Assembly (NCBI RefSeq): GCF_902459465.1
Contig: NC_047069.1
Span: 6,386,001-6,450,000 of the forward strand
DNA: 64,000 bases
From: Asterias rubens
Taxonomy: Eukaryota
Direction of reading: 5' to 3'
Shown one piece after another: positions 6,001-43,400 of the stretch. Under the pieces are notes generated by a model. That model was not told the origin of the DNA and ran no database searches. It was given only the letters and a program-made list of their open reading frames with translations. Position 1 is the stretch's first letter; the number at the start of each line of letters is the position of its first letter. The translations under genes and the position numbers were made by a program.

Positions 6001-9000
6001 AAAAATATGGCCCATTGCTGTGGTGTTTTTGCTGTGGGGCCCTATGCAAAATTCCTGTACAAATGTACGTTTTCCCTAAAGAAGTGCCCCATATTAGAGG
6101 GTAATTGCTTTGCTCCTTAAATAGAGAAGTTCAAGGCCTGTTAGTAAATGCCAAAATTAGCAGGTGATCTGCACTCAAAGAGTATTCATTACATAGTATT
6201 TGGCTGGTAACCTGAACGTACTAAGCGTGTTGTCTGTGCTAACCATTTTTAGGGGGTGCTAAATAACGTCCGTCGATAAATCGAAAATACTAAAAAACTC
6301 AATATTTTGTTGACATCGAAATCGCCGATGTCACTTTTATAATCATATCGTAATATCGGATTTTAGATATATCGAAAATTTCGATGTTTTGAAAAGTTTG
6401 ATGTTCCTAAATGATATCGAAAATACCAAAAGAGTGTCCGATTACTTAAAAGAAATCTGTGTTTGAGTATTAGAAAGGCCGTCGTCGTTATGTAGTTTCA
6501 TCATTTTGAGTTGCCCTATTAAATAAAATATGTTTTACAACCAAGTATGTCTGCTTGTTCTTTGTGTTTTCGCCATCAGCCGACGGCCCGCCGCAGAAGT
6601 TCACGACCTCGCGGCGAGCGCACGGTAAAAGCTCAAAAGAAACCGCCGCTGCTGCCCCAGCAGCCTATCGGCTGTTTAAGATGCAACTTCCCATTGTGCA
6701 TGTGATCAAAAATCAATGCGTCTCCATCACAGCATTACTGACTTTGCAAAAATACCCCGCAAAAACTTCCCCGAATCAACAAGACAAAACAAAACATGGA
6801 TGAAAACAATCTTACGTTATACAGTAAAATAATCTTTCTATCAATCCAAGGTATCGTAATGGCGTCATTTTGGTCAATTAAAGCCTACACGTTGTGTTGT
6901 TTTCGTAAACAAGCTAACATTTCCGAGGAACTATATGCTTCGCAGACCACGCTGTCGGCAGCTATTGCGTGCGTACCAGCGAAGACTATGCTTTTGTACG
7001 GTTTAAGCGTGCACACCAGCGTGTGTGGTTAATGCAATTCGGGGGGAAAACCCGTTTGCCCAAGTTTGGTCAAGGCGGTATCGCGTGATGCACTGCGTTA
7101 TTTCGACAAAAAAAAGGGCGTTCTAGCATTCAATGTTTCTTGCCTTTATTATAGAGTGCAAAGTAAAAAGACGAGCCTTTATTGGAGACTATGTGATTGC
7201 ATGCTGCGTGCGTTGTATATTGTGATCGCGGAGTGGTAGGTCTGTGTTTTGCGGGACTTTCTAGTGATTTGTTTTCGATGATTATCTCAACCATTTTTAA
7301 CCGGAAAGGTAGTGTAACATACCAGCGGACATTTATTATGTATCTAACAATATTGCCGTGAATTGTCGTTATTTTGGAGGGCATTAGACTCTGAAAAAGT
7401 TTAGTAACTAATTCATTAAGTGTTGACAAAGTTTGAAGCACCACGCTCCTAACACTCTTCACTCTCCACATAGAACAGCGGGCCTGTCTACCTAATTGTA
7501 GTTCTAACTGCACCAAATTAGATTTTTTTCCCACACCATACCAAAGATCTCAACTCAAAGCCGCCCACCGGCGCCCGTCGGACAACTTGATTGACACTTC
7601 TACGTCAATGCATCAGCAACTGACACCTTTTGTCAGCGAGTCACGCAACTCACAAAGGCTCTGTGTCATTTTGAGACGGCCAATCATGGCCAATCACGAA
7701 TCGAGAATTGTGGTGACTGTCACCAATTGGCCATGCCAGCGGTAGCGGCGATCAATTCATACAAGTTCGGAGGATCAGACAAAAACAGGTTTAAATGTAA
7801 CCCTATTAAACTGTCAGTCTACGGTATATATATTTCTACCTCCGTGAGTATACCAAGTGCTGTTTTTAGGCTTCATCTTGCGCGCGGGAAATACTCGATA
7901 TATTGAGTAAACTCGATATTAAATTTTCGATATGGGAAAAAAACTACATCGACGGACGTTAGTGCTAAATAGGTCTGTTTAAAGCCAAATTTGACTCAGG
8001 ATTACTGTGTGCTTTTTGTAATGACTAAAATGTTGAATCTGTAATGTGACATTTCGATTTAATGTTTAAAATTGTGAAAATTGTCATCGTAAATGTTGAT
8101 GTAATTTTGTTTTAGGTATACCCCAGGCAATGATGAAATCGGAGAGGCAGATCTCACAGTCGCTACCCACTGCCGTCGCCAACGCAACAACCCCTGCTAG
8201 GGAGTCGATGAGACCCATGGGGTCCCGCACCCCTAGGACCAAAGATGCCCAGTCAACACCCAGGTTCTACCCAGTCATTAAGGACTCGAGACCTATCGAT
8301 AATAAGGTGAGCATGTACCCAGAATCCAGTTGCATAGATCTAGGTGAGCATGTACCCAGAATCCAGTTGCATAGATCTAGGTGAGCATGTACCCAGAACC
8401 CAGTTGCATAGATCTAGGTGAGCATGTACCCAGAACCCAGTTGCATAGATCTAGGTGAGCATGTACCCAGAACCCAGTTGCATAGATCTAGGTGAGCATG
8501 TACCCAGAACCCAGTTGCATAGATCTAGGTGAGCAGTGTACCTCAGAACCCAGTTGCATAGGATCTAGGTGACATGTACCCAGCAACCCAGTTGCATAGA
8601 TCCTAGGTGAGCATGTACCCTGAACCCAGTTGCATAGATCGAGATGAGCATGTACCCGAGAAACCCAGTTGCATAGAGCTAGGTGAGTCATGAACCAGAA
8701 CCAGTTGCATAGATCTGAGTGAGCAGTGTACCCAGAACCCAGTTGCATAGATTCTAGGTCGAGCAATGTACCCAGAAAACCCAGTTGCAATAGATCTAGT
8801 GAGCAGTGGTAACCCATACCCAGTTTGCATAGATCTTAGGTGGAGCAATGTACCCAGAACCCAGTTGCATAGATCTAGGTGAGCATGTACCCAGAACCCA
8901 GTTGCATAGATCTAAGTGAGCATGTACCCAGAACCCAGTTGCATAGATCTAAGTGAGCGTGTACCCAGAACCCAGTTGCATAGATCTAGGTGAGCATGTA

Positions 9001-23084: not shown

Positions 23085-23430
23085 TAATTATAAGCATGTC
23101 AATTTTGGTTTTTACCCGCACACCGATGTGTGTTAGCACTGTATACTCAGTACTTTCCCAAGTCCTGTGAACAAATATCACAGGCATATAACTCGGGTGG
23201 GATTCGAACCCACAACCCTTACATTTCTAGAGCAGTGTCTTACCAACTAGACTACCGAGATTGCCGGGTAGCTAGAGGCAGTTCGAATCCTATGTTTTGG
23301 CAGCGGCCGGGTACCGCAACGATACAAGAGATTTTGCATCGGGAGTAAAGAATATTAATTTTTTTTTTACCCATACACTGATGTGTGTTAGCACTGTATA
23401 CTCAGTACTTTCCCCGAGTTCTGTGACTCT
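23085..23430 (-). mobile_element. tRNA-head SINE-like element, reverse orientation, with ~60-bp direct duplication at both ends
   Basis: GGGATTCGAACCCAC (reverse B box) and ACCAACTAGACTACC (reverse A box); TTTTACCC..GATGTGTGTTAGCACTGTATACTCAGTACTTTCCC occurs twice; relatives at about 2805-2950, 28760-28930 and 49105-49280. Confidence 0.6.
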
Positions 23431-26192: not shown

Positions 26193-29100
26193 CTACCTCG
26201 TCTTGTACACCACAGCAGATCTTATCTTAGGCTTCTTATTCTTCTCTCTCTTTCTCCGATCATACTCCTCGTAGTCATCGAGACGAAACTTTGTGTCCTG
26301 AATGACGGCAGACTTAAGCCTAGATCTGCCTCTAATTTTCTGCCTGAGGCCTTCTCTCTTCTTCTCCTGCTCCTGTTCCTCTCGAGTCTTGAGGTTCTTT
26401 GTCAGTCTCTGCTTGAGGTGCGCCTCTCGGCGTCTCAGCTCTCGCCTCTTTCTCGCCTCCTCCTTCAACTTCATCTTCTCTTCTTCCTCCTTCCGTTGCT
26501 TCTCCTCTTCGAGTTGTCTCAGTCTTTCTCTCTCTAGCTCCTCAAGACGCTGCTGAACCTCCTCTTGCTGTCTCACAACCTAAAAGAATAATGATTAGGA
26601 ATTAAAGAAGTACAGTTAGTGGAGATTTGAATGCGGTATGTTGTGGTTGAGCGGATAAGAACACCGAACTCAAGCCCTGGTGTTTCTAATCGAGTCCCAG
26701 TCGTTACACTCGTGTCCCTGAGCAAGACACTGAATTATTCCTCTCTCTAACCCAGGGGTAACTGGTTACCTGTGAGGGCAGAGATGATTCTTGTGATTGA
26801 TTAAGCTTGGTAGCGTTTATTTGCTGTACATTTCCCAGTAAACAGGGGTTACAATGTTGGAAGCGCTTTGAGACGCCCTTCGGGTGTGTAAAGCTGCTAC
26901 ATAAAAACCGACTATTATTACAATTATTATTGCCCTGTTCAGCGGTGCGCTTGGCATAACATACCTTGACTCTCTCAAGAAGCTCAGTCAGCAACCTGAT
27001 TGACTCTAGCTGCCTGAGTGCTATGAGAAGCTTGCGTTCCTCCAGCGCTATCCGACGCTGCAACTCTGCCTCCTGTTTGATTCTCTTCTTCTCCTCTTGA
27101 ATTCGTCTTCGTTTCTTTTCTCTTTGCTGCCTCCGTTCCTCGCGCCGTGTCAGCTTGGCCTGTTTGCGCTGCTTCTTGTACAACTCCTCCTGCTCTTTCC
27201 TCCTCCTAGAAGGAAAATCCAAGATGTCAAATACAAACAAACTTAGTTATTAGAAGTACACTTAAAGATATTCAGATCATCACAATTTAACACAGGATGA
27301 AGAGAATGTCTCCTGACGATGACTGGAGCAAGCTTGTCTAAACATTTAGACCAATTTTAAAAACTCACTCCGTGGCAGTGCAGTTGAGTTAACAATCCTT
27401 CAACTAAGCTAAAGTAGTAGTCCCAGCCGTTTTTCCACCCAAGCAGTAGTTAATAAGCAGGACAGTTCTTTTCAGAACTGAGAAGTCTCCCGAAAACCCA
27501 ATAAAATCTACTCCGCAGTAGTAGAATATAGAGCAAGGCAAGTTCTCTAAAGAACAAACTCTTCCTGGCAAGTAGTATACACACATGGTGTTACCGCAAA
27601 CCAAAATACCTCCAATGCAATGCCTCAAATCATATGTGAAAAGAATGGTTTGGTCTTCTAAAACGCATTGTCAATCATCAAAAGGTAAATTTGAATTTCT
27701 TGTAAATTTGCTCTCATTGTCTTCTGATCGTCTTAATTATCCTGAAGACGATCAGTCAAAGCATGCTAATTGAAACTTTGAGTTGTCAACCACTCGTTCT
27801 TTTCAGAACCAACACTACTCAAAAGAGATTTCTACGTGGTGTGAACACAAAACCCCGTCTAGGAGTAGTCTTCTTTACCTTTCGTCTTCCAGTTTCTTTT
27901 CTTCCTCTTCTCTTTCTAAGCGTTTCTGGTCTTCTCTGGCTTTCTCAAGTTCAATCAGTCTCGTTCTTTCTTTCTCTCGTTTCCGGATGGCTTTGGCACT
28001 CATGTGACGAGTTTTGTCGAAATCAACCTGAAGTGAAAAATGTATGTATAAAATAAGTGGAAGATTCAATTTTTTTTAACACATTTATTTCAAAAATTTA
28101 ATCACAGCAGGTATTGTAAGGCAAAGGGTAGGCAAGTATGTGCTACGTGAGGGTAATGAAAGTGGAAGTGTGTGGCCGAGCGGTTAAGAGCACCGAATTC
28201 AAACTCTGGTGTTTCTGATCAGCAGAGTGTGGGTTTGAATCCCCAGCCATGACACTTGTGTTCTTAAGCAAGACACTTAACCATTGCTTCGTCCTTCGGA
28301 TGGGATGTAAAGCCGTTGGTCCCATGTGTTGTGTGAGTGTGACGCATGTAAAAGAACCCAGTGCTCTTTTCGAAAAGAGAAGGGGTTCGCCCCGGTGTTC
28401 CTGGCTGTGGCTGCTGTATGCGCCTTGTAAACCCTTATAAGGTGCTAAATAATTGGGTCTCGGAATTAATAACTGCAATAACCTATTTTTCTGAAAGTTT
28501 GTATACACTCGGCGCCTTGAGTACCTTGTTTGGTAGATACGTGCGCTATAAGACTACTACTACTATGAAGAATTACTCTGTGATGAAACTGAGCTGGGAA
28601 TGGCCGGAGTGCTAGCCTTGAGGTTGACCGGGATAGGGCAGTCGTATCAGACCCCAAAAGTGGCTTACTTGATGGTGATAAAATATTGCAAAGTTATTGA
28701 ATCCATTTAACCATACCAGTACAGCAATTTACAGGCATGAAAATTATTGGTACTTATCCCCATGTGTACAACGGCAATGCATACTCAGTACTTTCCCGAG
28801 TTCTGTTAAAAAAAAAACATCAACCGTTTAATGCAAGAGCAGGACAATTATACTGTTTAATTTTAGGGGGATTCAAACTTGGGTCAACTGTGATGTAAGG
28901 CAGGGAAAGAAACCGCTGAGCCACCCTGAATAGTTAACGAATAAGAAACCAGACTGTTTCCCTGTTAACCTCGCTTTAGATCTCATGAATTTGTACGGGG
29001 AATCTTGGTGCTTGGTAAAGGTGACTAAGGTCTAGTACCTTGATGTCTGCTGTATAGGCTTTGCCCTCCTTCCCTTCCTCCGAGCTCATTTCTTTCTTCA

Positions 29101-29818
29101 GTAGCTTCATGCCCTTCAGAGCATCCATCGCCTTCACAAATCCAATGTACTCGCTATACTGAACGTAGACTTCAAATGTCAGCGTACTGAAGGATGAAAA
29201 CGTTCTGAAGTTTCCCCCGATGACCTGAGACTCATGTCTGTACGGATCAAGCATTGGAACATCCACGTTTCTTATCTCCCCGAAAAGCTCAAATATCTTC
29301 TTGATGATCAGCTCACTGGGTTTGTCTGGCTCTGCCGTTGAGGAAAACCATTTGCAAGGTAAGCCTTCCAGTTTGATTGTATCTGGTCGCTCGCCGTGAT
29401 TGCTCTCATTCATGTTTTTGGCATCGCGGAAGAACGAGTCCCAATCGTGACGGTTGGGGAAGTTTATCTTCGCCTCAGCTGCTCTGACCTTGAGCGGCTC
29501 TGGGAATCCACTGAGCTTGATGACCTTCCCGTCGAGTCTAAGGATCAGGACTTTGATAAGACTTTTGGCTTCCACCTCAGCCTCAAAGCGGAGGAACTCC
29601 AGGGAGCTCTTGCTGACTCTCAGGACCAGGAAGGAATCAGGCTTGGCCATCCGCTTCAGCTTCTCCATGACCTCCCAGTTGCTGATGGACTTCCCTTCTG
29701 TCTTCATCTGCGGCAGCGTTACGGAGATGTTGAGCTTGGCGATAGGTTTGATGTACAGCCCATGGGGACCATGGAGCTCGACTGCCTCTGACTGGTTGAA
29801 ACATAGCTGTGTTGTCAT
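26193..29818 (-). CDS. AKAP17A: A-kinase anchor protein 17A (XE7/SFRS17A), 518 aa; complement(join(26193..26579,26965..27205,27879..28027,29039..29818))
   Basis: N-terminus LYIKPIAKLNISVTLPQMK..GKSISNWEVMEKL, NFPNRHDWDSFFRDAKNMNE..GERPDTI, RRM-like FEVYVQYSEYIGFVKAMDALKGMKL, VDFDKTRHMS, EERKLLIALRQLESIRLLTELL; phases 0, 2, 0 consistent; TAG at 26195-26193; 5'UTR acceptor at 29897-29898. Confidence 0.96.
26633..26932 (+). mobile_element. tRNA-derived SINE, second subfamily
   Basis: A-box-like TGGTTGAGCGGATAA, GTGTCCCTGAGCAAGACAC, CCCAGGGGTAA..CCTGTGAGGGCAGAGATG core, (TAT)n tail; relative at about 56265-56440. Confidence 0.7.
28164..28566 (+). mobile_element. tRNA-derived SINE, near-complete copy
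   Basis: A box TGGCCGAGCGGTTAA, B box GGGTTTGAATCCC, (TAC)n tail; diverged copy at about 58810-59140. Confidence 0.82.
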
Positions 29819-30848
29819 GATGACAGAATTGCCCAGAATTGTTGGTCAGAGATGACCCACTGCAACATCAACTGAAGTACCTCAGGCACGCATCCACTGG
29901 AATATAAAATAGAAAACAAGTCTTGTTCTTTATTTAAAACACAACAGAATCAAACATCCATAACAAAAATCAAATGCAATCTTTTTTAGTATTAATAAAG
30001 CTCTTTAGTTAATCTTCCTATACTATACGCTTTTAGTATTTGCCTACAAAAGTACATGGAAGGAGGTCCTGTTTTCAAGGTGTCCCTAAAATCGTGGCAA
30101 ATCTTTTACCTCTCTGTGCGTGATGTAAACAGTCCATAGATACATAAAATTTGGTGTTATTTGCCAAGCAAAGAGTCTGCTCTGCCTTGACCAAAAGTTA
30201 GAAACACGTAAGGCTCCACTGGTTATTTGAACTTGTAGGCCTAACTTTAATATGCAACAAGTTTGGTATTTTAGGCATTTCTACAAGGTACAAAAATGTG
30301 TCATTGTTGAGGCCATATAAAACAAAAATTGCTCACCGAAAAAGTTTCATCAAACACTAATTCAATTCACAATTTACGATGATCAAATCATGCTTGTTAA
30401 TGTTACTGAACATTCTGCTGAGCATTCTGGGGCATTCTGGTGTGTGGTGTGAAAATTTCAATGTCCATAAAGTTTTAATTAATTAGGAGGGCATATCGGT
30501 TGTCTTGATATATCGCATCATTATTTATTTCCCAATTCAAAGAAAAAGGCAAAATACCGTGAAAACTGGTAAGAGTAGGATACTGGTATAAATTGATTTC
30601 AATTTTAAAAGCCACCTGCACGCGCTATATCAATCAAAGTTTCAAAAACAAATGGAAATTCTCACGATACTGGTGCAGTTGTCAATGAATGACGACTGGC
30701 GTAAACACGATCGGACAACCATGGATGCACGAGGCAGGGACAACGAACTAATGCAAAACAATGATCTACACTTTCCAAGTTTCCTGAGCATGCTGGGGCA
30801 AAAGCACTTTTCAAACGGGTAAAGTATTTTCGTTTTTTTCATACTTAC

Positions 30849-30910
30849 AATCACATCGTATTTTTCAAGTTTTCACTTTTTAACCATAAAGTATAAAAAT
30901 AATGTTGTAT
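30849..30910 (-). other. Probable non-coding first exon of AKAP17A
   Basis: Strong minus-strand donor ATT|GTAAGTATG at 30848; lies just downstream of an oriented TATAA-containing motif (30915-30951). 5' boundary is approximate. Confidence 0.5.
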
Positions 30911-30960
30911 TGGTTAGTTTAGTTAACGGTCTCATTATATAGCGCCATCCTACGCATTTA

Positions 30961-31087
30961 GGCCGTGTCCGAAACGGCGACTTCGACTTGAGCTACGGCT
31001 AGATCACCGCGTCTGCACGCGATGAAGAATAAGCAGATGCGTGCGATATAGTCGTATCTCTAGCCGAACTCACCGTTTCGGACACTC
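30961..31087. mobile_element. PIF/Harbinger-like MITE; inverted partner at about 31640-31747
   Basis: TTA|GGCCGTGTCCGAAACG ... CGTTTCGGACACTC|TAA; the second copy ends CGTTTCGGACACGGCC|TTA. Confidence 0.6.
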
Positions 31088-32582
31088 TAACCGTACGTAA
31101 TGTTTATTATGCACATGTTGTCAAATTGTGGTCGAGAACCAAACATTGGGTGCACATTTCTTAACTTTATTTATAAGAGGTCCACGTAACTAGTAGTAGC
31201 CCTCTCTGTTCGTGGTTTCTTAATAAACCTACTTAGTTACTCATTATAACGTAAACTTTACTCATAACATAAACTTAAGTAGGTAATTTAATTAACGGTG
31301 ACATTAAATAGCGCCCTCTAGTGATGCTGGTCTAGTGCGCACGTGCAATTATTAATACTAGACTTAACCACCCAATGCCTAGGAGGGCGCTATATAAGGG
31401 GACCGTTAACCAAACTAAACAACCCAATGCCTAGGAGGGCGCTACACACAAGGGGACCGTTAACTAAACTAAAATTTAGTACCCGGTTCGTAGGATCGAG
31501 AGCCAGGGTGCTTGCAATTGCTGTGTGATGACAGGTGGTCAATTCTGCTCTATTGCTCCATGGTCGACCGGTGTCTGTTGCGTGCTGGTTGTTGGGTAAG
31601 TACCTAGGTTTTTCCTTTTTTTTTACCGAGTGTTTTTTTCTACCTCTAGCTACGGCTAGATCGCGCGCGTCTGCCTATTCTTCAACACTGGTAGACGCGC
31701 TGATCTAGTCGTAGCTGTAGCCGAAGTCGTCGTTTCGGACACGGCCTTACTACTATAGATTGAGTTTCATTCTGCTTTAGTCACTAGATGGATCACGTGA
31801 GGTGGTTACTATTTGGGGTTCTATGGTGCGCAAATGTGGTGGGGAAAATATTAAACTATTTTAAGTGAAAATGACAACAATTTGTTTTATTTATTTACTG
31901 CATAACTGTTATAAATTCTGATAAGCGTAAACTAATAAATATTAAGTCTACATTTAAGAGGAAATATCATAGATTGGTTTCTTATCTCCTGAAACCAAAC
32001 ATGACTGGTCTGAAATGGGGGAAACGGATTGTTATGAAGTGTCAGTGCATCAAGGGGGAGGGGGGGTGGGGTGTTTTACTTTCATGCCTTATGATATCTC
32101 TGGATTCTAATATAGTAGCCATAATGCCTTAGGACAAAAATGTAATTAAATTTGTTAAGTACTAATTGAATAACATTTTTGATTTACTTTGCACGCCATA
32201 CTAACTTCTGAATATTCAATAAAATACCAACCAATGAAAGGTGTGAAAACATATGACGTTGCTCCAATGTCGTGCATGCACAAGCACTGTTAATGGCGGG
32301 CTGTCTCTCGCAACGTAAAACCAAAACTTTAAAAATTTCAACACACCATGAAGTGAAAGTGTTATTGTTAAAAAATTGGATAGATGATTTGAAACAAAAA
32401 TATTTAGTTTTTGATTGTGAACAATTTTCCTGTTATCCTACTGAAAACACATGACACCAGGAAATAAATACTCATTTCATCATGTTCATTGTGTGTTGAG
32501 TGAATAGTAATAGTAAATGCGTCTTGTTCCAAGCATGGTCTTGCGTCTTGACGCACAGTCACAGAGTCATGGACACGACCAG

Positions 32583-32830
32583 GGCCCAATTTCATGGCTC
32601 TGCTTACCGCTGAATTATGCGCTTACGATCACGATTCCTCAATTAAGTGCAAGCGCCGAATTTCTGCACTAGCCTTGTAAGTGTAGAATGCCTAGTAACG
32701 CGGAGTATGCACACGCAGAAGCCAAAATTTGCCACTAACCCATGACATACGCTTGCAGTATGCACATAATTTCTTGCTTCCGTAAGCGCCTATTCTGTGC
32801 TTAAAGTTACACTGAGCCATGATATTGGGC
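32583..32830. mobile_element. Harbinger-like MITE with CAG target duplication
   Basis: CAG|GGCCCAATTTCATGGCT ... AGCCATGATATTGGGCC|CAG; family members at about 25810, 33000, 37973, 55412, 58146 and 63006. Confidence 0.7.
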
Positions 32831-34445
32831 CCAGCTAGAGCCCAATTTCATAAAGCTGTTTACCGTACTCTGTTTGTCGTACTCTGTAGCAGAAAAGTGT
32901 GTGTTTAAAAAGCATAGACAGATTTCACCATGATTTTTCGAGAAACCAGATAATTTCTAGGTGCGCATGCACGTTGACCTAAATTTGCTTTGTTACGCAG
33001 CTCCATAATTTCATAGCCGTGCTTAGCGGGCAATTTTGTGCTTACTGTGCAACTTCTATTTCAAAGCGCTGCTAACCGTAAGCACACGAAAAGGCATGCT
33101 TACCTTCATGTGCTCACCGCAACGAAACTAAATGACGTCACAATGCAAACCATTGTTAAAAACGCCTTATGGCCGCCCAATTTGTCTGCCAACTTGTGAA
33201 ATAGGCTTATACCATAGCAAATTTTTCTGCTACAGTAAGCACGAAAAATTTGCTTACCGTTAAGCAGCGCTATGGTATTGGGCCAAGCACTCATGTGCTA
33301 ACCGCGATTAGCCAGCATTTTCCTTTGCTTATATATAAGGGTAAACAGCTATTTAAAAAAAAAAATTGCTTTAAAAAGAAGGGATGCATAGTGCCAGTGT
33401 AATCATTGTCAAATGTTGGTTGGGGAAGTGCATCCTTACTAATTCTCTGAAATAGTGCCGACATCAAAACCTCCTTTTCAATTGCATAAAGTGTACATTC
33501 TGTACCGTTGATTTTTTATATTTGTATGCATGATTTACATATGAGTGGATGACTAAATAAATTGATTTCAACGTCATTCTGTCTCAAATTGTAGATATTG
33601 TGTTTTAATTTACACATCAGCATGAGTTTTCTTCCTCATAAGATTGCACAATTTTGTATCCCCCCCCAAAAAAAAAAAAAAAATATCCCTTTTTGGTTTT
33701 TGGATCAGTGTGTTTTAGATGATCAGATGTTGTGTTAGCTGTACTATTTTATGGTTTTCAAGGAAGGCCCATAAATCACAGAGTAATGACAGAGAGTTCT
33801 ATGAACAAAATGCAGCACAAAAAACATTGATACATTTGTACAGCTAGTACTCCCTAAGGATGCAGTGCAGGAAACAAGGATGTGAACTTTGCGACCTTTC
33901 TAGGCTGTGGAATTTAAATTGTATTCACACTAAGGGTATAGCAGTAAGTATTTATAAATTATTGCCAGCCTCATGGTCATGGTTGAGCGGTAAAAAAACA
34001 CACACACAGGAATTGCACTTTTGTTTTTTTTAGATCTGAGCAGACGACAATCGAAAGTGTGCAAAAGCTGCAGTAGTAAACTCCATCAAACATCGGACCA
34101 ATCATAACGCATAATGAAAAGCTTACGTCACTGTCGTTATCCAATGAAATCATTGCATCTAGTAAAACCACTGGGCCTGTGCATGTCTTTACCATTGCGG
34201 ATACCAGTTAAAGATAAGGGACCAGTCTAGGCTGACCTCCTCCTCCGTTAGAGGGCGCTGTATAAGGAGACCGTTAATTTGGTAAACTGAGGTCAAGGGT
34301 TGGGGGTACACGTGTTTTTGTGTGACTTATGTCGTCAGAAAAAAAATGATACAAATTGTCGTCCGTGAAAACAAGACGTACAGACTCTGCTGGCTTTCGG
34401 TTCGGCATCAAATGAACTTCAACTTGTGACCTTACAAATACAACA

Positions 34446-37400
34446 ATGTCGGATGTTGTTACCAAGTACGCGGAAGTTGCTGCTCGGCAGGTAATTCTTC
34501 ACATTCTTTCAATTTTAATTTACAAAACTGGAAAGGAAAAGATTCTGCCAACGCAACGTTCTTCACAAAACTAGCGCAATTGGCTGCATTCTCAGTGTTG
34601 TGTACAATTGTAAAATGTCTTTTATATAATTTGATGTATAAATTGGGGTCCTACTAGCTACTTGCCGTCAACTCGCCGTCAACTCACTTGCGCCGTCAAC
34701 TCGCCGTCAACTCCACCAATATACATTTAAAATTCACAAAAGAAGCATAGAACTGTAAAGTATCAGCTCAAAGAGCATTCGCGTAAGTTTTAGGTCATAT
34801 TTCGGAATAAAAATTGATTTTTTTTCTCGTGAAAAAAAATTCTCGAAGCCAAAAAACTGTCGGCCGCCATCTTGCTTTTTCACAATGATTAGTCTTGGCC
34901 CAAGATGTCAATGATTGGTACTTTTTTTTTATCAACACAAAGTTGTTTTTGTGAATGAATTTGTACCGAAAACCATGAGAAATATGTAGCCCAGACTTAA
35001 CACTTCCGTGCCCCCTTTTTATAGATTTTTCATGTAAATTTAATGAGTTGACGGCACGAAAATGAGTTGACGGCGAGTTGACGGCAAGTCGGCGAGTTGA
35101 CGGCAAGTAGTAGGACCGATAAATTGTTCTGTGTTTGGTATAGTTGGACCTACCTCCATGGTTGGACGGACGGTTTAGACCATGGTTAGCTACCTCCGTG
35201 ATTAGACCATGGGTGTTCTGAATAAATAAATTGTCCCAAGCTCAGTCAAGCAAGCAAGGAAGGAAGACATACAATCATAAAATCATGGGATAACTTTCCG
35301 TATGGCGCCACCACTTTTTCACTCATTTTTACAAAAAGGGATATATCAATCAGGTAAATTAGATACTATATTATTTTATTTCGAATGAAAAAGTGGTGGC
35401 GCCATACGGAAACTTTTCCGAAACGGAGGAAGAATCATGATGTGCAGTCCTACTACTTGCCGTCAACTCGCCGACTTGCCGTCAACTCATTTTCGTGCCG
35501 TCAACTCATTAAATTTACATGAAAAATCTATATAAGGGGCACGGAAGTGTTAAGTCTGGGCTAAACTACATATTTCTCATGGTTTTCGGTAAAAATTCAT
35601 TCACAAAAACGACTTTGTGTTGATAAAAAAAAAGTACCAATCATTGACATCTTGGGCCAAGACTAATCAATGTGAAAAAGCAAGATGGCAGCCGACGGTT
35701 TAACTGCTGCGAGATAATTTTTTCACAACAAAAAAACTCAATTTTTATTCCGAAATATGACCTAAAAATTACGCGAATTCTCTTTGAGCTGATACTTTAC
35801 AGTTCTATGCTTCTTTTGTGGATTTTAAATGTATATTGGAGGAGTTGACGGTGAGTTGACGGCGCAAGTGAGTTGACGGCGAGTTGACGGCAAGTAGTAG
35901 GACCCATGATGTGTGCTGTCATGTTTCTACGCCTTCAGTTTAGTCAGTGACATTTTAATGGGGGTTATTGTGTTCAGGCTGGTGTGTGTTGTGTTAATTG
36001 AAGTATTCACCTTATTTTATTTGAGAAGATATCTCTACCTTTTAAAATAAAATAAGGCCATCCATGGGCTTATTCTTAACTCTAGTAAGATAAGAATAAG
36101 CCAATGGATGGTTAGACCTTTTTTGTTGTGCTCTGAAGTAGTCTTTAAATTTGGTTGCTGCATCGTGCACAGCATCAGAGAACTGCTCCAAACAAGATAA
36201 TTTCTCAAACATCTGCTGAAAACTTACCTCTGTATTTATTAATTTTTGTAAAGCTTTTGTGTGAAGCTCTATTATATAAGTGCCGTTTATTATTACATTA
36301 ATTATTTTTAATATTTTACTAATTTAATAATGTTAATAGCCTTTTCATGAAGGGTCTGTTTTACATGTTTGGTAACGATTCTGAAAACTAATGGCAATAA
36401 AACCTTCTCTATCTATTCTTCCTACATGTACATGGAATCTTTTGGTAAGAAGTACATCAGCTTTGGAGAGTATTGCATTTTGAGAAGGGTTTCACCTCAA
36501 AGTACTACCATTATCCAAACGCATTACTCTATTCAACAATTTTTTAAACAACACATTGTGTATTTCACAGAAACTATTCTTCTTGCGTGGACATTCGCTA
36601 AGCAGTTTCGGCGATATCTCAAAAACGCCACTGCCATGCGAAATGATATTTCCTGAGATTAATTTAAATAGACACAACTACACAGTACATTTGATTAAAA
36701 CAATCAAATGGTAAATAAAAAAAGTTAAGATTGCCTTTGAAGTTCTATCCTTCTAATGGAAGATTACATTTGGAATTACATAAATTGGTTTTGCTAGCAA
36801 ATAAATGCTGGCAGTGTAAACACTTGCTGTCATCCACTTACATAAACTGACAAACCTGAAGTAGTTCGAGATCAATCAGCCATCTGGGTCACAAGAGAAT
36901 AGTGAAAAACCAATTACAAATTTTGCATTGCATTGATGCCAAAACGGAAATGAATAGAATCTTTGTATTAACCTATTCTGAAACGTTCCTTTAAAACTAG
37001 CTCCATAAATGGACATACACCCCGGCCCTGTACATGTAAATAATACCGATATGCTTGACTCCCTCCCTCCCTCTGCTTCTTGGCTCTACGCCCAAGTTCC
37101 TTCCGAAGGGGAAATGTTTTTTTGAAGGGGAAATATTTTTTTTCAAAATTTGAACAATTACCTTGCCTCCAGATGTTATATTCCCTCTGTACTTCAGACA
37201 AAAAAGAACTGGTTCAATAATTCGCTCATCCCAAGGTGCCTTTCTACTGAATATATAGGCTCTGTTCTCATTTTAAACAACCCTGACATTCACATATTTG
37301 TACTAGATGCAATGTCAGAATTGTAAAAAATTAGTACAAAGCCCCAGTGACTTGGTCAGATGCTCTCTTATTGAATGAGCTCATATTACAATTTTCACTT

Positions 37401-40400
37401 TTGTTACTTTTGTTTTTAAGTTAACATTTCAGTGTCCATTGTACTTACTTTTTTACGCAATATCTGTGTAATTATGATTCAGTTGCAGATTTCAAGCTCT
37501 GTTTGATTGTCTTTTTATCAAATTTGTTTCTTTGCCATGCCTTGTGTGTTTTTGTTGATGTATATTGTGTAATAGTATTGCAATTTTCTTGTTGCATATA
37601 TTTCAATCCGATAATTTTTTATACTAAGTGACATTCCCCCATTGTTTGATTCAGTTGAGTTTGGTATGAAATTAAATATCTTGTGTTTTATCTAAATTTT
37701 TGTAGGAGGCTGAGATTGCAAAATTGAAAGAAGAAATTCTTGCTTTGCAAAATGGAGAGGTTGAGTTATCTCCGGAGGTTGAGAAACTCAAAGTTGAGAA
37801 CCAGAAACTCAAGTATCGTCTTGGACACCTACTCAGGGTGAGTTTTTTTCAGCCTTGGTGATGTTTTACATGATCACCTCTCCATATAAACATTATCTGA
37901 CTTCTTTATTTGTTTCCCTGTCACAAAAAAATGTAGAGGCTGATATATTTTACAAACTGGAGTAAAACATCTGGTCCCAATTTCATAGAGCTGCTAAAAG
38001 GCATTGGACACTATTGGTAATTGTCAAAGACCATTCTTCTCGCCTGGTGTGTTTTAACATATAAGCATGAAATAGCAAACCTGTGAAAATCTGAACCCAA
38101 GTGGTTGTCAAGTTGCGAGAGAATAATGGGGAAACGACACCCTTGTTGGACAAGTTGTATGCTTTCAGATGCCTTGAAATCAAAACCTCAACTCAGGTCT
38201 TAAATTAAATTCAAATATTTTAGTGAGAAATTACTTCTTTCTCAAACACTAATTACTTCAGAGGGAGCTGTTTCTCACAATGTTTAATACTATCAACAGC
38301 TTATTGCTCTCCATTGCTCTATAAGTTTTTATGCTAACAGTTATTTTAAGTAATTACCAATAGTGTCCTTGCTTACCAGCAAATGAGGTTACCAGCCAAA
38401 CTACTATGCCACACATAAAATTCGTGACTGGTATCCTGCTCATTTCTGCTTAGCAGAAAATTGGTAAGGAATTTTTTTGCTTAAGCAGACACATGGAATT
38501 GGGCTCTGAAGGCAGGTCTGCTTCTCCACGGAGGTAATTCTTGGTGGCCATCAAACGTATGGCTGTTCCTAAGTTAGGATGAGTAACTAACTTGAGATAA
38601 GAGTAGACTTAACTCTTTGTGAAATACACCCCAGGTCTACGATGGAGCCTATTCAATTTTCAGACCTGGAATTTCATCTTTGAAAGGGCAAGGCCATTTT
38701 CAATTGGCAAAGGGCTCTTCCGTAGGAAAATCTTCAAGTTTTCCAGTTTCTGGGACACTTTTGATGGGGCACTTAGGTAAAGACCAGGGGCAGCACTCCA
38801 ATGCCTTTGTGTTGCTCCTGTAATAAAGATCCCAACCCCAGTTTAGTAATGAAATAATTATTCAGTTGACGTGTGTTTCCATCCTTGCCTTTAGAGCATT
38901 GCTGAAGAAGAAAAGAACACGGCTAAGGCTTCTTCAGATGACGCCAACGTGATGACCAACATCAGCCAGAAGCTGGAGACTGTGTTTGCCACGGCAATCA
39001 AAGCTTCGTTCCCAGAGCTTCCCAATCCGTCAGTTGCTGTAGAATCCAGCAAGAATGATCGCTTTGGCGATTACCAATGCAACAGCGCTATGGCTATTGC
39101 TCAGGTAAAGTAACAAAGTTTCATTCCTTCTGCCAAGGTAGTACTTGTAAAGCAGGACAGTTCTTTTCAGAACTGAGAAGTCTCTAAAATTCTGAACAGC
39201 AAGACAAGTTCTCAAAAGAATATAATCTACCAGCAAGATACACGCACACAGTGTTACTGCAAACCACATTTTATTGATACCTCACCATGCAATCCCTCAA
39301 ATCTTATACAAGATAAGAAAGTTACGGAGAATGACTTAAAATGATTGCTGATAATCAATAACAGGGCCCAATAAGCCATAGTTTGCAGTCCGATTTGAAT
39401 AAAGTCTGGTACAATGAATTGGTTGATCACAATTTACAAAGTAAATTTGAATTCCTCAGACTATAGAGAAGTTGCCTTTTCACAAGATTTTTACTTGAAT
39501 TTTGACCTCCGAATTAACATTCCACATGCCATTCATTGGTAGAGTTTTATTTCATCATTACCTAATTATTTATATTTTTAAGAAAATGCCCATAGTGTAT
39601 TTTATTGTATTTTCTCTCTACCCCTCTCTCTATGTAGCAACTAAGAGCTATTGGAAAGAAGACTTCACCAAATGAAATTGCCAGGGAAGTCGTGAAGAGC
39701 TTGCCACCTAGTGACATCATAGAAAAGGTTTGTGGAAACACTTATTATGTTGGCAACTTTATCTGTAAAACAGAGAAACTTTTGGATTTTATTCACGCTT
39801 TTATTTAACCAAGAATGGAATACAATGATGAAATAAAAAGGAAAAATTGTCGGTGAAATGTTTGACCATTTTTTTTAGTCCGCTTCACTTAAATATTTCA
39901 ACACTGACAGCTAACTGAGTGACGTAACTGCCTGTTATCTAACAAGTCTTCACAAACCGATAATTCAAACCGACTGTGGCGTCACATAAACAGTGCCCTC
40001 ACGCATGACAAAGGAAAAATCAATCGTAGGCTGGTAGTTATGCGTGGCACGTACATAACTGCGAGTTTCCAATGGTCATCTTAACCAATGAAGCCTTTCA
40101 AAATTTTTCCTCCGCCAATCGGAACCTTCCTACTAAGCCTCTTTTTTATTATCCTGGCTCTTCGATGGATAAGCATCCAATTCAAAGTTGGAGTAGCATT
40201 TGTCATCCAATCGGAACCTTAAACCTTAAAAGGTTTCTTTCCTTGCCTTCCACCTTTAGGATACTAGTTTGAATTCCCCTGGAGGCACTTTGTGGATTGG
40301 GTTTTCCAGTCACTAACTGATAACATGGGGTTTCCACCACATATTATAAAACTGAAACTAACTGTTTTGTCGTCTCTCCATTGGGGTTCTTGGCTTCACA

Positions 40401-43400
40401 ACCAGAATAATTGATATGAATAAAACTAAAGCATCACTGCATATCATTATTGGCTACATAGGATTTGAAACTTTGCACGGTGGAAATACGATATAGAAAG
40501 GTTTGCGGTAACACCATGTAATGACTATCTCTAATGAGTAGGAGTGGTTCTGAAAAGAACCGTTGGTTAAACTCGAAGTTTCAATCAGTATCGTCTTTTT
40601 TTTTCTCCTTTTTTTTTTTCTCTCCAGAAGAGGATCAGAGCATACTGATCAAAACGTCGAGTTAAACCAACGGTGGTTTTCAGAACCACCCCAACTCATT
40701 AGAGATAGTCATTACATGTTGTTACGGCAAACCTTGCCATATATTATTGGCTACCTTAATATTCCTTCTTGTTCTTCAATTATTTTTTTCAGGTTGACAT
40801 TGCTGGCCCTGGTTTCATCAATATCCACATCAGACGTCCCTTTGTTTCCACAGTGATCAGTGACATTCTAAACAAGGGAGTCAGGCCGCCAAAGACTGGC
40901 GGCAAGCGACGGGTTGTCATCGACATGTCCTCGCCAAATATTGCTAAGGAAATGCATGTGGGTCATCTAAGGTCAACCATCATTGGTGAGAGCATCTCTC
41001 GACTGCTGGTTTTTGCAGGTGAGTACGGTATACCAGTTAATAAAATGATTCAAAAATCCAAACAAATATTCCTGATGATTGACCATTTGAAATCTTCCAA
41101 AATTTGATCGTTGACAGATCAGTATCCATATGTGTGTCTTTGGACTTCCAAAGCCTCTCTTATAAAATGATTTGATATTGAGTTGGCACCTTTCTATCTT
41201 GTAGGTCATGAACTCGTGAAGGTGAACCATCTGGGTGACTGGGGTACCCAGTTTGGGATGCTTATCGCCCATCTACAGGACCGTTTCCCAAATTACTTGA
41301 CTGAGTCGCCCCCTATCTCCGATCTTCAGGCATTTTACAAGGTACTGTATTATTCTATTTGAAAGATTTGCCAAAAACAACAAGCACTCTAACCAAGGCC
41401 GGAATACAACAGTGTAGAGAAGATGATAAAGAAATTACCAGTTTTCTAGTCGTGGGAGGAAAACCTTCTGCTTCATATTATTTTGACTTTGTGTATATTG
41501 TTTTCTTGTATTAAAGGCAGTGGACACTATTGGTAATTATCAAAGACTAGCCTTCACAGTTGGTGTATCTCAACATATATGCATAAAATAACAAACCTGT
41601 GAAAATTTGGGCTCAATCGGTCATCGAAGTTGCGAGATAATAATGAAAGAAAAAAACACCCTAGTCACACGAACTTGTGTGCCTTTAGATGATTTCGAGG
41701 CCTCAAGTTTTAAACCTGAGGTCTTGAAATAAAATTCGTGGAAAATTACTTCTTTCTCGAAAACTACATTGCTTCAGAGGGAGCCGTTTCTCACAATGTT
41801 TTATACCATCAACCTCACCCCATTACTCGTCACCAAGAAAGGTTTTATGCTAGTAAATATTTTGAGTGTTTACCAATAGTGTCCACTGCCTTTAAAGACA
41901 CTGGACACCTTTGGTAATTGTCAAAGACCAGTTTTTTTACTTGGTGTATCTCAACATAATCTTGTGAACATTTTGACTCAATTGGTCGTCAAAGTTGGGA
42001 GATAATAATGAAAGAAAAAACACCCTTGTCACACTGAGTTGTGTGATTTCATATGCCTGATTTTGTTACTTCAAAATCTAATTCTGAGGTCTTGAAATCA
42101 AATTCATGGAAAATAACTTCTTTCTCGAAAACTTTGCTACTTCAAAGGGAGCCAATTCTCACAATGTTTTAAACTATCAAACGGCTCTCCAAGTTATTTT
42201 TTATGCCAAACAATTATTTTGAGTAATTACCAATAGTTTCCAGTGCCCTTTTAAAATAGCCAAATAAATAACAATAATAACAACAATAAAAACATTAAAA
42301 AAAAAAGTTATTTTATTTTTCATCACATAAGTTTGGTTCATACATACGCGCGTAAACAAAATGTGTGAGTTGATGTGTAGATTGATGTAAACACATATTT
42401 CCAAAGATCAGTCTTGTTGACTTGGTTTTTCTTCATCCTGTAACTATCTCAGGAGTCTAAAGTTCGCTTTGATGAGGATGCTGAGTTCAAGAAGCGTGCC
42501 TACTCATTGGTTGTCAAGCTACAAGCTAAAGATTCAGACATCATCAAAGCATGGACCATGATCTGTGACATCTCATTCAAAGGTAACAGCTCCCGAGTAA
42601 AGAGCAAAGCACTCTCAGGGCTTGAATTTTACACTGGACCCTGGGCTTGATGCCACTGGTTTTAGTGTTGGGCCAGTATAGTTATGACCAGAAAAGTCCG
42701 ACTATCTTGTGTAAAAAAAAAATCATAAATACCTAAGACAATTGATCCATTCTGATTGGTCGAGAGGGCATCACGAGGTGTTGTTTGAACGGATGATATA
42801 ACACCAGTAAAAAGTGTTATAATATGGGCGTGACACGCTCGCTTGCACCTGTGCACATAAGACATTTTTTTTATTCCTATTGGTCGAGAGCAACAGCTGA
42901 AACAGTTGTGCCACATCACGCGATACGCGTTATAAGGAGTTGTTTACCCGTGGGCCTAACCATTTTATAGCTGGAGTAGCCTTGCTCAAGGCAGTCGCAT
43001 TATTCGCTCCAAAAGACGCCGCTGTAAACCCATCCGTATACCCTGTGCGTGGTGCGTGCGATCACACCGCATGACCCACCCGTATACACACTGTCACATT
43101 GTACGACTACTGTGCACACAAGTCATCCGCACTCGTACCACTAACCGCATGCGGAGGCCGTCAGACCAACAGCCCTGTCGGGTCTGTAACACCCGGGTTT
43201 AATGTGTTTCATTAAATAATTTCCACTAGTGGAAAAAAATGTGAGGCAAATGAATTATTCATTTTGACGTCCAGTCACGCACTTCCCTTATCACAACCTT
43301 TGGACCCTATCATGCTCGCTGAGCGTCCGTGGTGGTGGTGTGTGATGTAAACATGTCTCGTCTTTCGCGGGCATTATGGTAATGAGCTGACCGTGGGAAC

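What the first reader, a model, noticed from the sequence alone, without database searches (positions are those of the whole stretch)
30915..34288. Bipartite, fixed-spacing promoter module pointing at each predicted start site
Seen, written in motif orientation: AGGATGGCGCT-ATATAATGAG-ACCGTTAACTAAACT (minus, 30915-30951); AGAGGGCGCT-ATTTAATGTC-ACCGTTAATTAAAT (minus, 31286-31324); AGGAGGGCGCT-ATATAAGGGG-ACCGTTAACCAAACT (plus, 31381); AGGAGGGCGCT-ACACACAAGGGG-ACCGTTAACTAAACT (plus, 31433, 52-bp tandem with CCAAT); AGAGGGCGCT-GTATAAGGAG-ACCGTTAATTTGG (plus, 34250, about 160 bp before the RARS1 ATG). The spacer is 10 nt in four of five copies and TATA-like in those four. Minus copies face AKAP17A and plus copies face RARS1. 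Lone GAGGGCGCT sites elsewhere (about 4990, 5750) lack the second half. The left half resembles the CTCF core and TAACGG resembles a MYB site, but I do not recognise the composite. Inference: a lineage-specific directional core-promoter element, or the footprint of one long zinc-finger protein.
Basis: partly seen in the sequence, partly recalled or inferred. Interest (0 to 1): 0.75.

Follow-up and report, generated by a model that had tools for sequence, protein, structure and literature searches.

The report
Repeated TATA promoter cassette, sea star
Five copies of a 27-base cassette (a TATA-like box held between two fixed flanking sites) lie between the back-to-back AKAP17A and RARS1 genes of the sea star Asterias rubens. 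Three copies sit just upstream of first exons, so this is best read as a locally multiplied promoter; a genome-wide promoter code is not shown.

Summary
GGCGCT-N10/12-ACCGTTAA occurs five times at the stated places, with none expected by chance. The window is Asterias rubens.

Copy 1 lies about 34 nt upstream of the 5' end of AKAP17A transcript contigs. Copies 3 and 4 lie just upstream of an annotated alternative first coding exon of RARS1, with its ATG at 31560. Copy 5 lies at most 79 nt upstream of the RARS1 contig starts.

The spacer is a TATA box. The left half, GAKGGCGCT, looks like the 3' part of a CTCF core or like a BREu element, and it also occurs alone (8 sites against 0.19 expected). 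The right half is a perfect OVO/MYB-type TAACGGT on the other strand.

Copies 1, 3 and 4 are paralogues of one 52-54 nt unit. That unit varies in number between A. rubens and A. amurensis. Copies 2 and 5 share only the core. Between copies the halves are invariant, the spacer half-variable and the flanks random, which suggests constraint.

The composite is absent upstream of AKAP17A in Acanthaster and in a crinoid.

The genome-wide distribution could not be tested. My best reading is a locally duplicated TATA promoter cassette. A lineage-wide element remains possible, at about 0.2.

The parts
30915..30951 (-). Copy 1. GATGGCGCT runs 30949->30941, the TATA-like spacer ATATAATGAG 30940->30931, and ACCGTTAA 30930->30923. 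This is the working AKAP17A promoter.
   Evidence: RNA contigs carry 46-59 nt upstream of the exon-2 junction at 29896, and bin depth fits an exon 1 at 30849..~30907.
30849..30907 (-). AKAP17A non-coding exon 1. Its donor GTAAGT starts at 30848 and it splices to the acceptor at 29897/29896.
   Evidence: record 17 of run X3 has 59 nt beyond 29896, and a depth of 2.97 in bin 30700-30899 equals 51 nt at depth 11.6. One search shows the splice sites. The exact 5' end is inferred, because the contig letters were not shown.
31286..31324 (-). Copy 2. TCACTAGAGGGCGCT matches the CTCF 15-mer consensus at 14 of 15 positions; it is followed by ATTTAATGTC and ACCGTTAA. No transcript was seen from it.
   Evidence: RNA depth is 0 in 31100-31299 in all four runs. 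It is conserved in A. amurensis.
31357..31473 (+). A 52-bp tandem array of 2.2 units that carries copy 3 (31381-31417, intact TATATAAGG) and copy 4 (31433-31471, degenerate TACACACAAGG, 12-nt spacer). Each unit has a CCAAT box.
   Evidence: (D3, D6). A. amurensis has 2.7 units and three modules, all with 10-nt spacers.
31475..31595 (+). RARS1 alternative first exon 1a. The ATG at 31560 opens 12 codons, the donor GTAAGT is at 31596, and the exon is in phase 0 into exon 2 at 37706. The 5' end is only estimated.
   Evidence: the annotated RARS1 coding range (667-aa product) starts at locus position 8259, which is window 31560. Searches show the phase. The frame is kept in A. amurensis. The four RNA runs gave no clear depth here.
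34250..34286 (+). Copy 5. CCGTTAGAGGGCGCT matches the CTCF consensus at 13 of 15 positions; it is followed by GTATAAGGAG and ACCGTTAA. This is the proximal RARS1 promoter.
   Evidence: RARS1 contigs of two runs start at 34340 with no mismatches. In the sister organism no difference is listed between 34192 and 34278 (table 3).
34340..34490 (+). RARS1 exon 1b as seen in RNA contigs, with the ATG at 34446 and the donor at 34491. The true 5' end may lie upstream, near 34291-34295.
   Evidence: records 21 and 29.
31319..31382 (.). The 64-bp core between the divergent copies 2 and 3. It holds TGCGCA and CACGTG (NRF1/P3A2-like and E-box-like strings).
   Evidence: Read directly (I10). The factor assignments rest on general knowledge and were not tested.

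Best explanation
The module is a TATA-box RNA polymerase II core-promoter cassette that has been copied several times within one intergenic region of Asterias.

Anatomy. Each cassette is 27 bp long. The left site, GAKGGCGCT, abuts a TATA(-like) box, and the right site, ACCGTTAA, begins 10 nt after the left site. The left site sits at about -43 to -35 from the start site. It looks like the 3' two-thirds of a CTCF core and, in position, like a TFIIB recognition element (BREu). The right site sits at about -24 to -17. On the other strand it reads TAACGGT, the core site of OVO/OVOL and MYB proteins.

Mechanism. Initiation occurs about 30-35 nt downstream of the TATA box, so the cassette is directional.

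What is shown:
- Five copies exist, with the stated orientations.
- A transcript 5' end lies at the expected distance from copy 1.
- RARS1 first exons lie downstream of copies 3/4 and of copy 5.
- The cassette is conserved in A. amurensis, where the tandem array has a different number of units.
- Copies 1, 3 and 4 are paralogues of one unit.

What is inferred:
- TBP binds the spacer.
- Separate sequence-specific proteins (CTCF-like, and OVO- or MYB-like) bind the two flanks. They may keep the promoter open or switch it, since binding there would compete with the pre-initiation complex.
- The fixed spacing is mainly inherited by duplication and then kept by selection.
For: - Five exact matches against none expected.
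- The AKAP17A exon-2 acceptor is exactly at 29896/29897, where the contigs end on the genome. The contigs carry 46 and 59 further nt. Bin depth fits an exon at 30849-30907, which begins 34 nt after the first T of TATATAAT in copy 1.
- The annotated RARS1 coding range begins at 31560, 97 nt after copy 4.
- RARS1 contigs start at 34340, 79 nt after the TATA of copy 5.
- Copies 1 and 3 align over 54 nt at 85%, and copies 3 and 4 form a 52-bp tandem. A. amurensis has three tandem modules.
- Between copies 2, 3 and 5, mismatches are 0 of 17 in the halves, 2-5 of 10 in the spacer, and about 66% in the flanks.
- GAKGGCGCT also stands alone: 8 sites in the window against 0.19 expected.
- Copies 2 and 5 match the CTCF 15-mer consensus with 1 and 2 mismatches.
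- TAACNGT is the OVO core and is enriched near start sites (PMC11410370). CCGTTA is bound by both OVO/OVOL and A-MYB (PMC11789646).
- RNA-contig depth over the modules is about 0. Over the neighbouring mobile elements it is in the thousands. The module is therefore not part of an abundant transcribed repeat.
Against: - The four RNA runs gave no RNA support for copy 2 and no clear support for exon 1a.
- Copy 4, the module nearest exon 1a, has a degenerate TATA in both species.
- The RARS1 contigs start in an A-run at 34340, 49 nt past the predicted start. A low-depth contig of the sister organism runs through copy 5. The start site for copy 5 is therefore not pinned down.
- The contig letters for AKAP17A exon 1 were not shown, so its placement rests on length, splice sites and bin depth.
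- The A. rubens to A. amurensis distance is too small (about 5%) to show extra constraint on the modules.
- The halves were defined after seeing which blocks are invariant, so the contrast is biased upward.
- No binding protein was tested.
Confidence: 0.55

Rival explanations
1. The composite is a genome-wide, lineage-specific core-promoter element of Asterias or forcipulatid sea stars. A fixed set of factors would read GAKGGCGCT, TATA and ACCGTTAA at fixed spacing at many promoters, and this locus would simply hold several instances.
For: - Copies 2 and 5 share only the 27-32 nt core with the others. Their flanks are as different as random sequence, yet both halves and the spacing are intact.
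- Each half resembles a known stand-alone factor site (PMC11410370).
- Acanthaster has the left half plus a T/A-rich stretch at a similar place upstream of AKAP17A.
Against: - There is no further copy in the 64-kb window or in the remaining ~23 kb of the A. amurensis locus.
- Three unrelated instances within 3.4 kb are unlikely unless they arose by duplication.
- The right half alone is not enriched: TAACGGT occurs 7 times against 4.5 expected, and 5 of the 7 are in the modules.
- The composite is absent from the Acanthaster and crinoid loci.
- A search of 5.8 billion predicted proteins with the translated module found nothing, and a strict pattern scan of metagenome contigs found nothing. Both blanks are weak evidence.
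Confidence: 0.2
2. The module is a non-functional local repeat. A minisatellite-like 52-bp unit, or a remnant of a mobile element, happens to contain TATA-like sequence and lies near the real promoters without driving them.
For: - The tandem unit number differs between sister species, 2.2 against 2.7.
- Copy 4 has suffered a 2-nt slip.
- No RNA was seen from copies 2-4 in four runs.
- The region is full of mobile-element insertions.
Against: - The 5' end of AKAP17A contigs lies at the canonical TATA distance from copy 1.
- An annotated coding start lies 97 nt from copy 4.
- There is no terminal-inverted-repeat plus target-duplication structure. The inverted homology simply follows the tandem unit (I2 and I16).
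- RNA-contig depth over the modules is about 0, against thousands over true repeats.
- The halves stay invariant while the flanks of copies 2 and 5 have randomised.
Confidence: 0.1
3. The 27-33 bp block is the footprint of a single long tandem zinc-finger protein, such as an extended CTCF mode or a lineage-specific factor. The TATA resemblance of the spacer would then be incidental.
For: - The conserved block runs from TAG to TTAA[CT], about 32 bp, roughly 9-11 fingers.
- The spacing is fixed at 10 nt in nine of the ten Asterias copies.
- The left part resembles the CTCF core.
- G/T interchange at the K position of AGRKGGC occurs in copies 1 and 2 between the two species.
Against: - In the known CTCF-DNA geometry only fingers 1-2 (about 6 bp) extend 3' of the core. 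CTCF alone cannot reach a site 11-18 bp away, and echinoderm CTCF has lost two fingers (PMC13317027).
- Spacer positions vary by 2-5 of 10 while still keeping T-A-rich, TATA-like sequence.
- A transcript 5' end lies at the TATA distance.
Confidence: 0.07
4. The module is an snRNA-type or RNA polymerase III type-3-like promoter. A PSE-like Myb-domain (SNAPc) site at fixed distance from a TATA box would drive a small non-coding RNA downstream of copies 3/4. T-runs lie at 31608-31625.
For: - ACCGTTAAC loosely resembles the ACCGTAAC part of the human U6 PSE (recalled from memory).
- Fixed spacing between a TATA box and a second element is typical of snRNA promoters.
- A T-rich run follows about 135-150 nt after copy 4.
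Against: - The order is wrong: the PSE should lie about 25 bp upstream of the TATA, whereas this site abuts it downstream.
- No Rfam family matches the region.
- The downstream sequence has a strong splice donor and an annotated coding start.
- Copies 1 and 5 drive mRNA genes.
Confidence: 0.03

Closest known systems
TATA box with upstream TFIIB recognition element (BREu, SSRCGCC) in RNA polymerase II core promoters
   Same: A G/C-rich heptamer, GGGCGCT, matches SSRCGCC at 6 of 7 positions and lies directly 5' of a TATA-like box. A transcript 5' end lies about 30-35 nt downstream. The element is directional.
   Different: - The register to the TATA box is off by 1-2 nt.
- The conserved left block is longer (TAG(G)AKGGCGCT).
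- The left block also occurs alone, far from any TATA.
- The downstream 8-mer ACCGTTAA does not fit BREd (RTDKKKK) or any named core element.
CTCF core motif (CCASYAGRKGGCRSY) near promoters
   Same: - Copies 2 and 5 match at 14 and 13 of 15 positions.
- All copies carry AGRKGGCGCT-like sequence.
- G/T variation falls at the K position.
- CTCF motifs are reported as enriched in echinoderm open chromatin and boundaries, and weakly near start sites (PMC13317027; bioRxiv 10.64898/2026.10.19.760054).
   Different: - Copies 1, 3 and 4 lack the 5' CCA part and have G in place of the conserved A.
- The full 15-mer is not enriched in the window (3 against 2.3 expected).
- No known CTCF mode reads a site 11-18 bp 3' of the core.
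OVO/OVOL and MYB sites (TAACNGT / CCGTTA) close to start sites
   Same: All five copies hold a perfect TAACGGT within about 25 nt of the inferred start site. OVO is known to bind unusually near start sites, and OVOL and MYB compete for CCGTTA (PMC11410370, PMC11789646, PMC1865076).
   Different: In Drosophila, OVO sites have no fixed distance to the start site, and OVO-bound promoters are depleted of TATA boxes. Here the site is locked 10 nt from the left half and abuts a TATA box. No sea-star binding data exist.
snRNA gene promoters (PSE plus TATA at fixed spacing, read by SNAPc with its Myb-type subunit)
   Same: Both are bipartite and depend on spacing, both include a TATA box, and the second element is Myb-type-like.
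   Different: The element order and distance are wrong, the genes are protein-coding, and no snRNA lies downstream.
Alternative promoters created by local promoter duplication (tandem promoter repeats)
   Same: A 52-bp promoter unit is repeated in tandem and in inverted orientation. The unit number varies between species. The copies serve different first exons of one gene and the neighbouring gene.
   Different: The same cassette serves two unrelated, divergently transcribed genes. Two copies (2 and 5) keep only the 27-bp core.

Membership tests
TATA-box Pol II core promoter | A TATAWAAR-like box | tested here: met
   Copies 1 and 3 have TATATAAT and TATATAAG, copy 5 has GTATAAGG, and copy 2 has the weaker TATTTAAT. 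Copy 4 is degenerate, TACACACAAGG.
TATA-box Pol II core promoter | Transcription start about 25-35 nt downstream of the box | tested here: inconclusive
   Copy 1: the contig 5' end is inferred at 30907, 34 nt after T30941. Copy 5: contigs start 79 nt after the box, inside an A-run. Copies 2-4: no 5'-end data. Assembled contigs are not 5'-end mapping.
BREu (TFIIB recognition element) | SSRCGCC immediately 5' of the first T of the TATA box | tested here: inconclusive
   GGGCGCT matches at 6 of 7 positions, but only in a register 1-2 nt off. In the strict register the match is 3 of 7 (read).
CTCF binding site | Match to the 15-bp core CCASYAGRKGGCRSY | tested here: inconclusive
   Copies 2 and 5 match with 1 and 2 mismatches. 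Copies 1, 3 and 4 need more than 2. Window-wide there are 3 hits against 2.3 expected.
CTCF binding site | Occupancy by CTCF protein | not testable with these tools
   No ChIP or footprint data for Asterias were available here.
OVO/OVOL or MYB site | Core TAACNGT / CCGTTA | tested here: met
   TAACGGT is perfect in all five copies. The core definition comes from PMC11410370 and PMC11789646.
OVO/OVOL or MYB site | Enrichment of the site beyond chance, and binding by the factor | tested here: not met
   Outside the modules TAACGGT occurs twice in 64 kb, while 4.5 sites are expected in the whole window. Binding itself could not be tested.
Transposable element or MITE | Terminal inverted repeats with target-site duplication, and many dispersed copies | tested here: not met
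   The inverted homology I2/I16 follows the tandem unit and has no flanking duplication. RNA-contig depth over the modules is about 0, against thousands over the adjacent MITE and SINE-like repeats. No copies occur elsewhere in the window or in L003. The genome-wide copy number was not measured.
snRNA-type / Pol III type-3 promoter | PSE about 25 bp upstream of the TATA box, and a small RNA gene downstream | tested here: not met
   The 8-mer lies downstream of the TATA box, and no Rfam family is found at 30000-35500 or in the whole window near the modules.
Genome-wide core-promoter motif | Recurrence at many unrelated promoters at a fixed position | not testable with these tools
   Only about 64 kb of Asterias sequence, plus about 20 kb of non-overlapping sequence, could be read. 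No whole-genome scan of a eukaryote is offered.

The most novel reading that the evidence does not exclude
Asterias, or forcipulatid sea stars more widely, use a previously undescribed fixed-geometry core promoter. In it a CTCF-like site and an OVO/MYB-type site clamp the TATA box at exact distances. That would point to dedicated factors that gate TBP access, possibly in a germline- or stage-specific way, at a class of promoters across the genome.
Probability: 0.2. Interest if true: 0.7.

Novelty: new variant of a known kind. Interest (0 to 1): 0.38.

Why it matters
If the cassette is only local, it is a clear example of new and alternative promoters arising by copying a 27-52 bp core-promoter unit. 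One unit type now serves two unrelated, divergent genes and two alternative first exons of RARS1.

If it recurs across the genome, it would be a new composite core-promoter architecture outside flies and vertebrates. It would tie CTCF-like and OVO/MYB-like sites to the TATA box at single-base spacing. That bears on the open question of what CTCF did at promoters before it became a loop anchor.

Tried and rejected
1. Mobile-element ends. The inverted arrangement of copies 1 and 4 looked like terminal inverted repeats. The homology continues into the CCAAT part of the tandem unit and there is no target duplication, so I rejected this.
2. Small-RNA gene downstream of copies 3/4. T-runs lie at 31608-31625, but there is no Rfam match, and the sequence has a splice donor and an annotated start codon. 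Rejected.
3. Conservation test against A. amurensis. The species are about 95% identical here, and the neighbouring MITE is just as conserved. The test is uninformative.
4. Orthology of copy 2 with the Acanthaster upstream site. The best local alignment is exactly this site, but it scores 28 against a shuffle mean of 24 (sd 2.1, maximum 31). This is only suggestive.
5. Wider occurrence.
   - A strict pattern scan of JGI metagenome contigs gave 0 hits.
   - A search with the translated tandem module against 5.8 billion predicted proteins found no candidate.
   - Four look-ups of the scan's notebook (three by motif words, and one by sequence) returned no note on the motif; two of them ended in errors. 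All are weak blanks.
6. Literature string search for the 8-mer returned only primers and unrelated constructs.
7. More sea-star orthologues of AKAP17A. Only A. rubens, A. amurensis and Acanthaster were available. RARS1 orthologues could not be reached, because no full-length query could be given by reference.
8. A marginal Rfam hit to the histone 3' stem-loop has no histone reading frame next to it.
Full report
**What is there.** The pattern GGCGCT-N(8-14)-ACCGTTAA matches five times in the 64-kb window, and none of 100 dinucleotide-preserving shuffles gave a match. The matches are 30923-30946(-), 31292-31315(-), 31386-31409(+), 31438-31463(+) and 34254-34277(+). The spacer is 10 nt in four copies and 12 nt in copy 4. 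I number the copies 1 to 5 from left to right.

**Organism and genes.** The 280-aa reading frame at 28976-29818(-) is 100% identical over 261 residues to the AKAP17A-like protein of Asterias rubens. It is 92% identical to that of Acanthaster planci. Looking that protein up returns A. rubens chromosome record LR699099.1. The neighbour on the other strand is a 667-aa product with Arg_tRNA_synt_N, tRNA-synt_1d and DALR_1 domains, which is RARS1.

**Relation to transcripts: AKAP17A.** I laid contigs of four RNA runs on 29500-35499. AKAP17A contigs of two runs stop matching the genome exactly at 29896. A polypyrimidine-AG acceptor lies there on the minus strand. The contigs carry 46 and 59 further nt. 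A GTAAGT donor on the minus strand starts at 30848. The depth of these runs in bin 30700-30899 (2.97 for a contig of depth 11.6, which equals 51 nt) fits an exon 1 that spans 30849 to about 30907. That 5' end is 34 nt after the first T of TATATAAT in copy 1. The letters of those 59 nt were not shown to me, so the placement is an inference from length, splice sites and depth.

**Relation to transcripts: RARS1.** Contigs of two runs match without mismatch and both begin at 34340, 79 nt after the TATA of copy 5. The start lies in an A-run, where the assemblies of the sister organism also break. A low-depth contig there runs upstream through copy 5. The proximal start site is therefore bounded but not fixed. 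The annotated RARS1 coding range begins at window 31560. That is an ATG in an exon just downstream of the tandem copies 3/4. The exon has a GTAAGT donor at 31596 and is in phase 0, as is the exon that holds the ATG at 34446. Both can join exon 2 at 37706. RARS1 thus has two alternative first coding exons, each preceded by a module. The four RNA runs gave no depth at 31100-31499, so copies 2-4 lack direct RNA support here.

**Anatomy of the module.** The spacer is a TATA box in copies 1, 3 and 5, weaker in copy 2, and degenerate in copy 4.

- *Left half.* The left half is really 9-12 nt long, TAG(G)AKGGCGCT. Copies 2 and 5 match the CTCF core consensus CCASYAGRKGGCRSY with one and two mismatches. 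The other copies match only its 3' part. GGGCGCT also resembles the TFIIB recognition element SSRCGCC at 6 of 7 positions, but 1-2 nt out of register. GAKGGCGCT is a motif in its own right. It occurs 8 times in the window against 0.19 expected, three of them alone, and twice in the 23-kb Acanthaster locus. The lone sites at 4991 and 5748 share flanking sequence, so they are probably carried by a repeat.
- *Right half.* On the other strand the right half reads TAACGGT. This is a perfect OVO core (TAACNGT, PMC11410370) and a CCGTTA site of the kind bound by OVO/OVOL and A-MYB (PMC11789646, PMC1865076). Outside the modules it is not enriched.
- *Positions.* Relative to the inferred AKAP17A start, the left half lies at about -43 to -35, the TATA box at about -34 to -27, and the right half at about -24 to -17.

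**Are the five copies independent?** No. Copy 1 and copy 3 align over 54 nt at 85%, including a CCAAT box (I2). Copies 3 and 4 are units of a 52-bp tandem. Copies 2 and 5 share only 31-35 nt with the rest (I10-I12). Between copies 2, 3 and 5, mismatches are 0 of 17 in the halves, 2-5 of 10 in the spacer, and about two-thirds in 41 flanking positions. This three-tier pattern is what constraint on both halves and on the spacing would give. However, the halves were defined after the fact, so the p-values are biased.

**Other species.**

- *A. amurensis.* All modules are present. The tandem array has 2.7 units with three modules, and all spacers are 10 nt. The 12-nt spacer of copy 4 is therefore a CA slip in A. 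rubens. Copies 1 and 2 show reciprocal G/T differences at the K position of GAKGGCGCT. Overall identity is about 95% and the adjacent MITE is equally conserved, so this pair cannot show selection.
- *Acanthaster planci.* The 10 kb upstream of AKAP17A has no composite. It has only GAGGGCGCT followed by CTTTAATT and GTCAC, 680 bp before the ATG. This is the best local alignment with the Asterias upstream region, but it is only marginally above shuffles. RARS1 is not found within 10 kb there.
- *Antedon (a crinoid).* The locus has nothing comparable.

**What it is not.**

- No Rfam family matches.
- There is no terminal-repeat plus target-duplication structure.
- RNA-contig depth over the modules is about zero. 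The palindromic MITEs at 30961-31085 and about 31640-31750, and the repeats at 32570-33300, reach depths of thousands to over 100,000. The module is therefore not part of an abundant transcribed repeat.

**Reading.** The best-supported explanation is a TATA-box core-promoter cassette with two conserved flanking sites. Local duplication, both tandem and inverted, multiplied it within an intergenic region that mobile elements have expanded. It now serves AKAP17A and two alternative RARS1 first exons. Copies 2 and 3 face away from each other 64 bp apart, around TGCGCA and CACGTG strings. Their predicted starts would be about 150 bp apart, the usual layout of a divergent promoter. This pair may be the older core.

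Proteins bound to the flanks would overlap the space needed by TBP, TFIIB and the polymerase. I therefore infer that they gate or pre-set the promoter and do not form part of the initiation complex. That step is inference only.

One long zinc-finger protein is less likely, for three reasons. The spacer keeps TATA character while varying. A 5' end lies at the TATA distance. And CTCF cannot reach 11-18 bp beyond its core, with the echinoderm protein two fingers shorter (PMC13317027).

**What remains open.** I could not test whether the composite recurs elsewhere in the genome. None of the tools scans a eukaryotic genome. A strict metagenome scan was blank, and so was a search with the translated module. 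Both blanks carry little weight. The window holds too few other promoters to judge.

**Earlier notes of this scan.** They identified the genome as a sea star and mention CTCF-like motifs in MITEs elsewhere in it. None describes this composite.

Noticed in passing
window 31560-31595 and 34446-34490, joining at 37706: RARS1 appears to have two alternative first coding exons. One encodes 12 codons starting MVDRC, the other 15 codons starting MSDVV. Both are in phase 0 into exon 2, and each has its own promoter module. The short exon-1a frame is kept in A. amurensis despite a shifted donor.
   Followed up: partly
window 30961-31085 and about 31640-31750: Two copies of a palindromic MITE (ends GGCCGTGTCCGAAACGG...) are present. 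One is inserted 10 nt upstream of copy 1 and is shared with A. amurensis. RNA-contig depth over them is in the hundreds to thousands, so the family is abundant in transcripts.
   Followed up: partly
window 32570-33300: A block of repeats with internal inverted copies shows extreme RNA-contig depth, up to about 127,000 in one run. It is probably a very abundant SINE-like family.
   Followed up: no
window 30947 and 31312; L003 8376-8381 and 8746-8754: There is a reciprocal G/T difference at the same motif position. Copy 1 is GATGGCGCT in A. rubens and GAGGGCGCT in A. amurensis. Copy 2 is the reverse. This could reflect tolerance at that position or gene conversion between the copies.
   Followed up: no
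window 4991(-), 5748(+), 14041(+): Lone GAGGGCGCT sites occur here. The first two face apart, lie 750 bp apart inside LARP1, and share a nearby GTACRCGATTCGC string. They are probably carried by a foldback repeat like those noted elsewhere in this genome.
   Followed up: partly
window 40521-40566 (-): An Rfam histone 3' stem-loop hit lies just above threshold (35.5 against 34 bits) inside a RARS1 intron. No histone reading frame lies beside it, so it is likely a chance hairpin.
   Followed up: yes
window 23189-23261 (-); L003 16738-16810: A tRNA gene lies downstream of AKAP17A and is conserved in A. amurensis.
   Followed up: no
window 35288-35419: A 37-nt inverted repeat at 92% forms a hairpin that gives sub-threshold hits to several plant MITE-derived microRNA families. 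It is another foldback element, in RARS1 intron 1.
   Followed up: no
window 34653-35488: Clusters of an 11-nt unit, GCCGTCAACTC, occur in direct and inverted orientation around the hairpin element in RARS1 intron 1.
   Followed up: no
window 37997-38368; L003, several places: A ~380-bp repeat in RARS1 intron 2 has six copies, at about 72-76% identity, within the 23.6-kb A. amurensis locus. Extra insertions there push RARS1 more than 10 kb from AKAP17A in that species.
   Followed up: no
window 31608-31625: Two T-runs lie right after the exon-1a donor. They would terminate RNA polymerase III, but no small-RNA family matches the region.
   Followed up: partly
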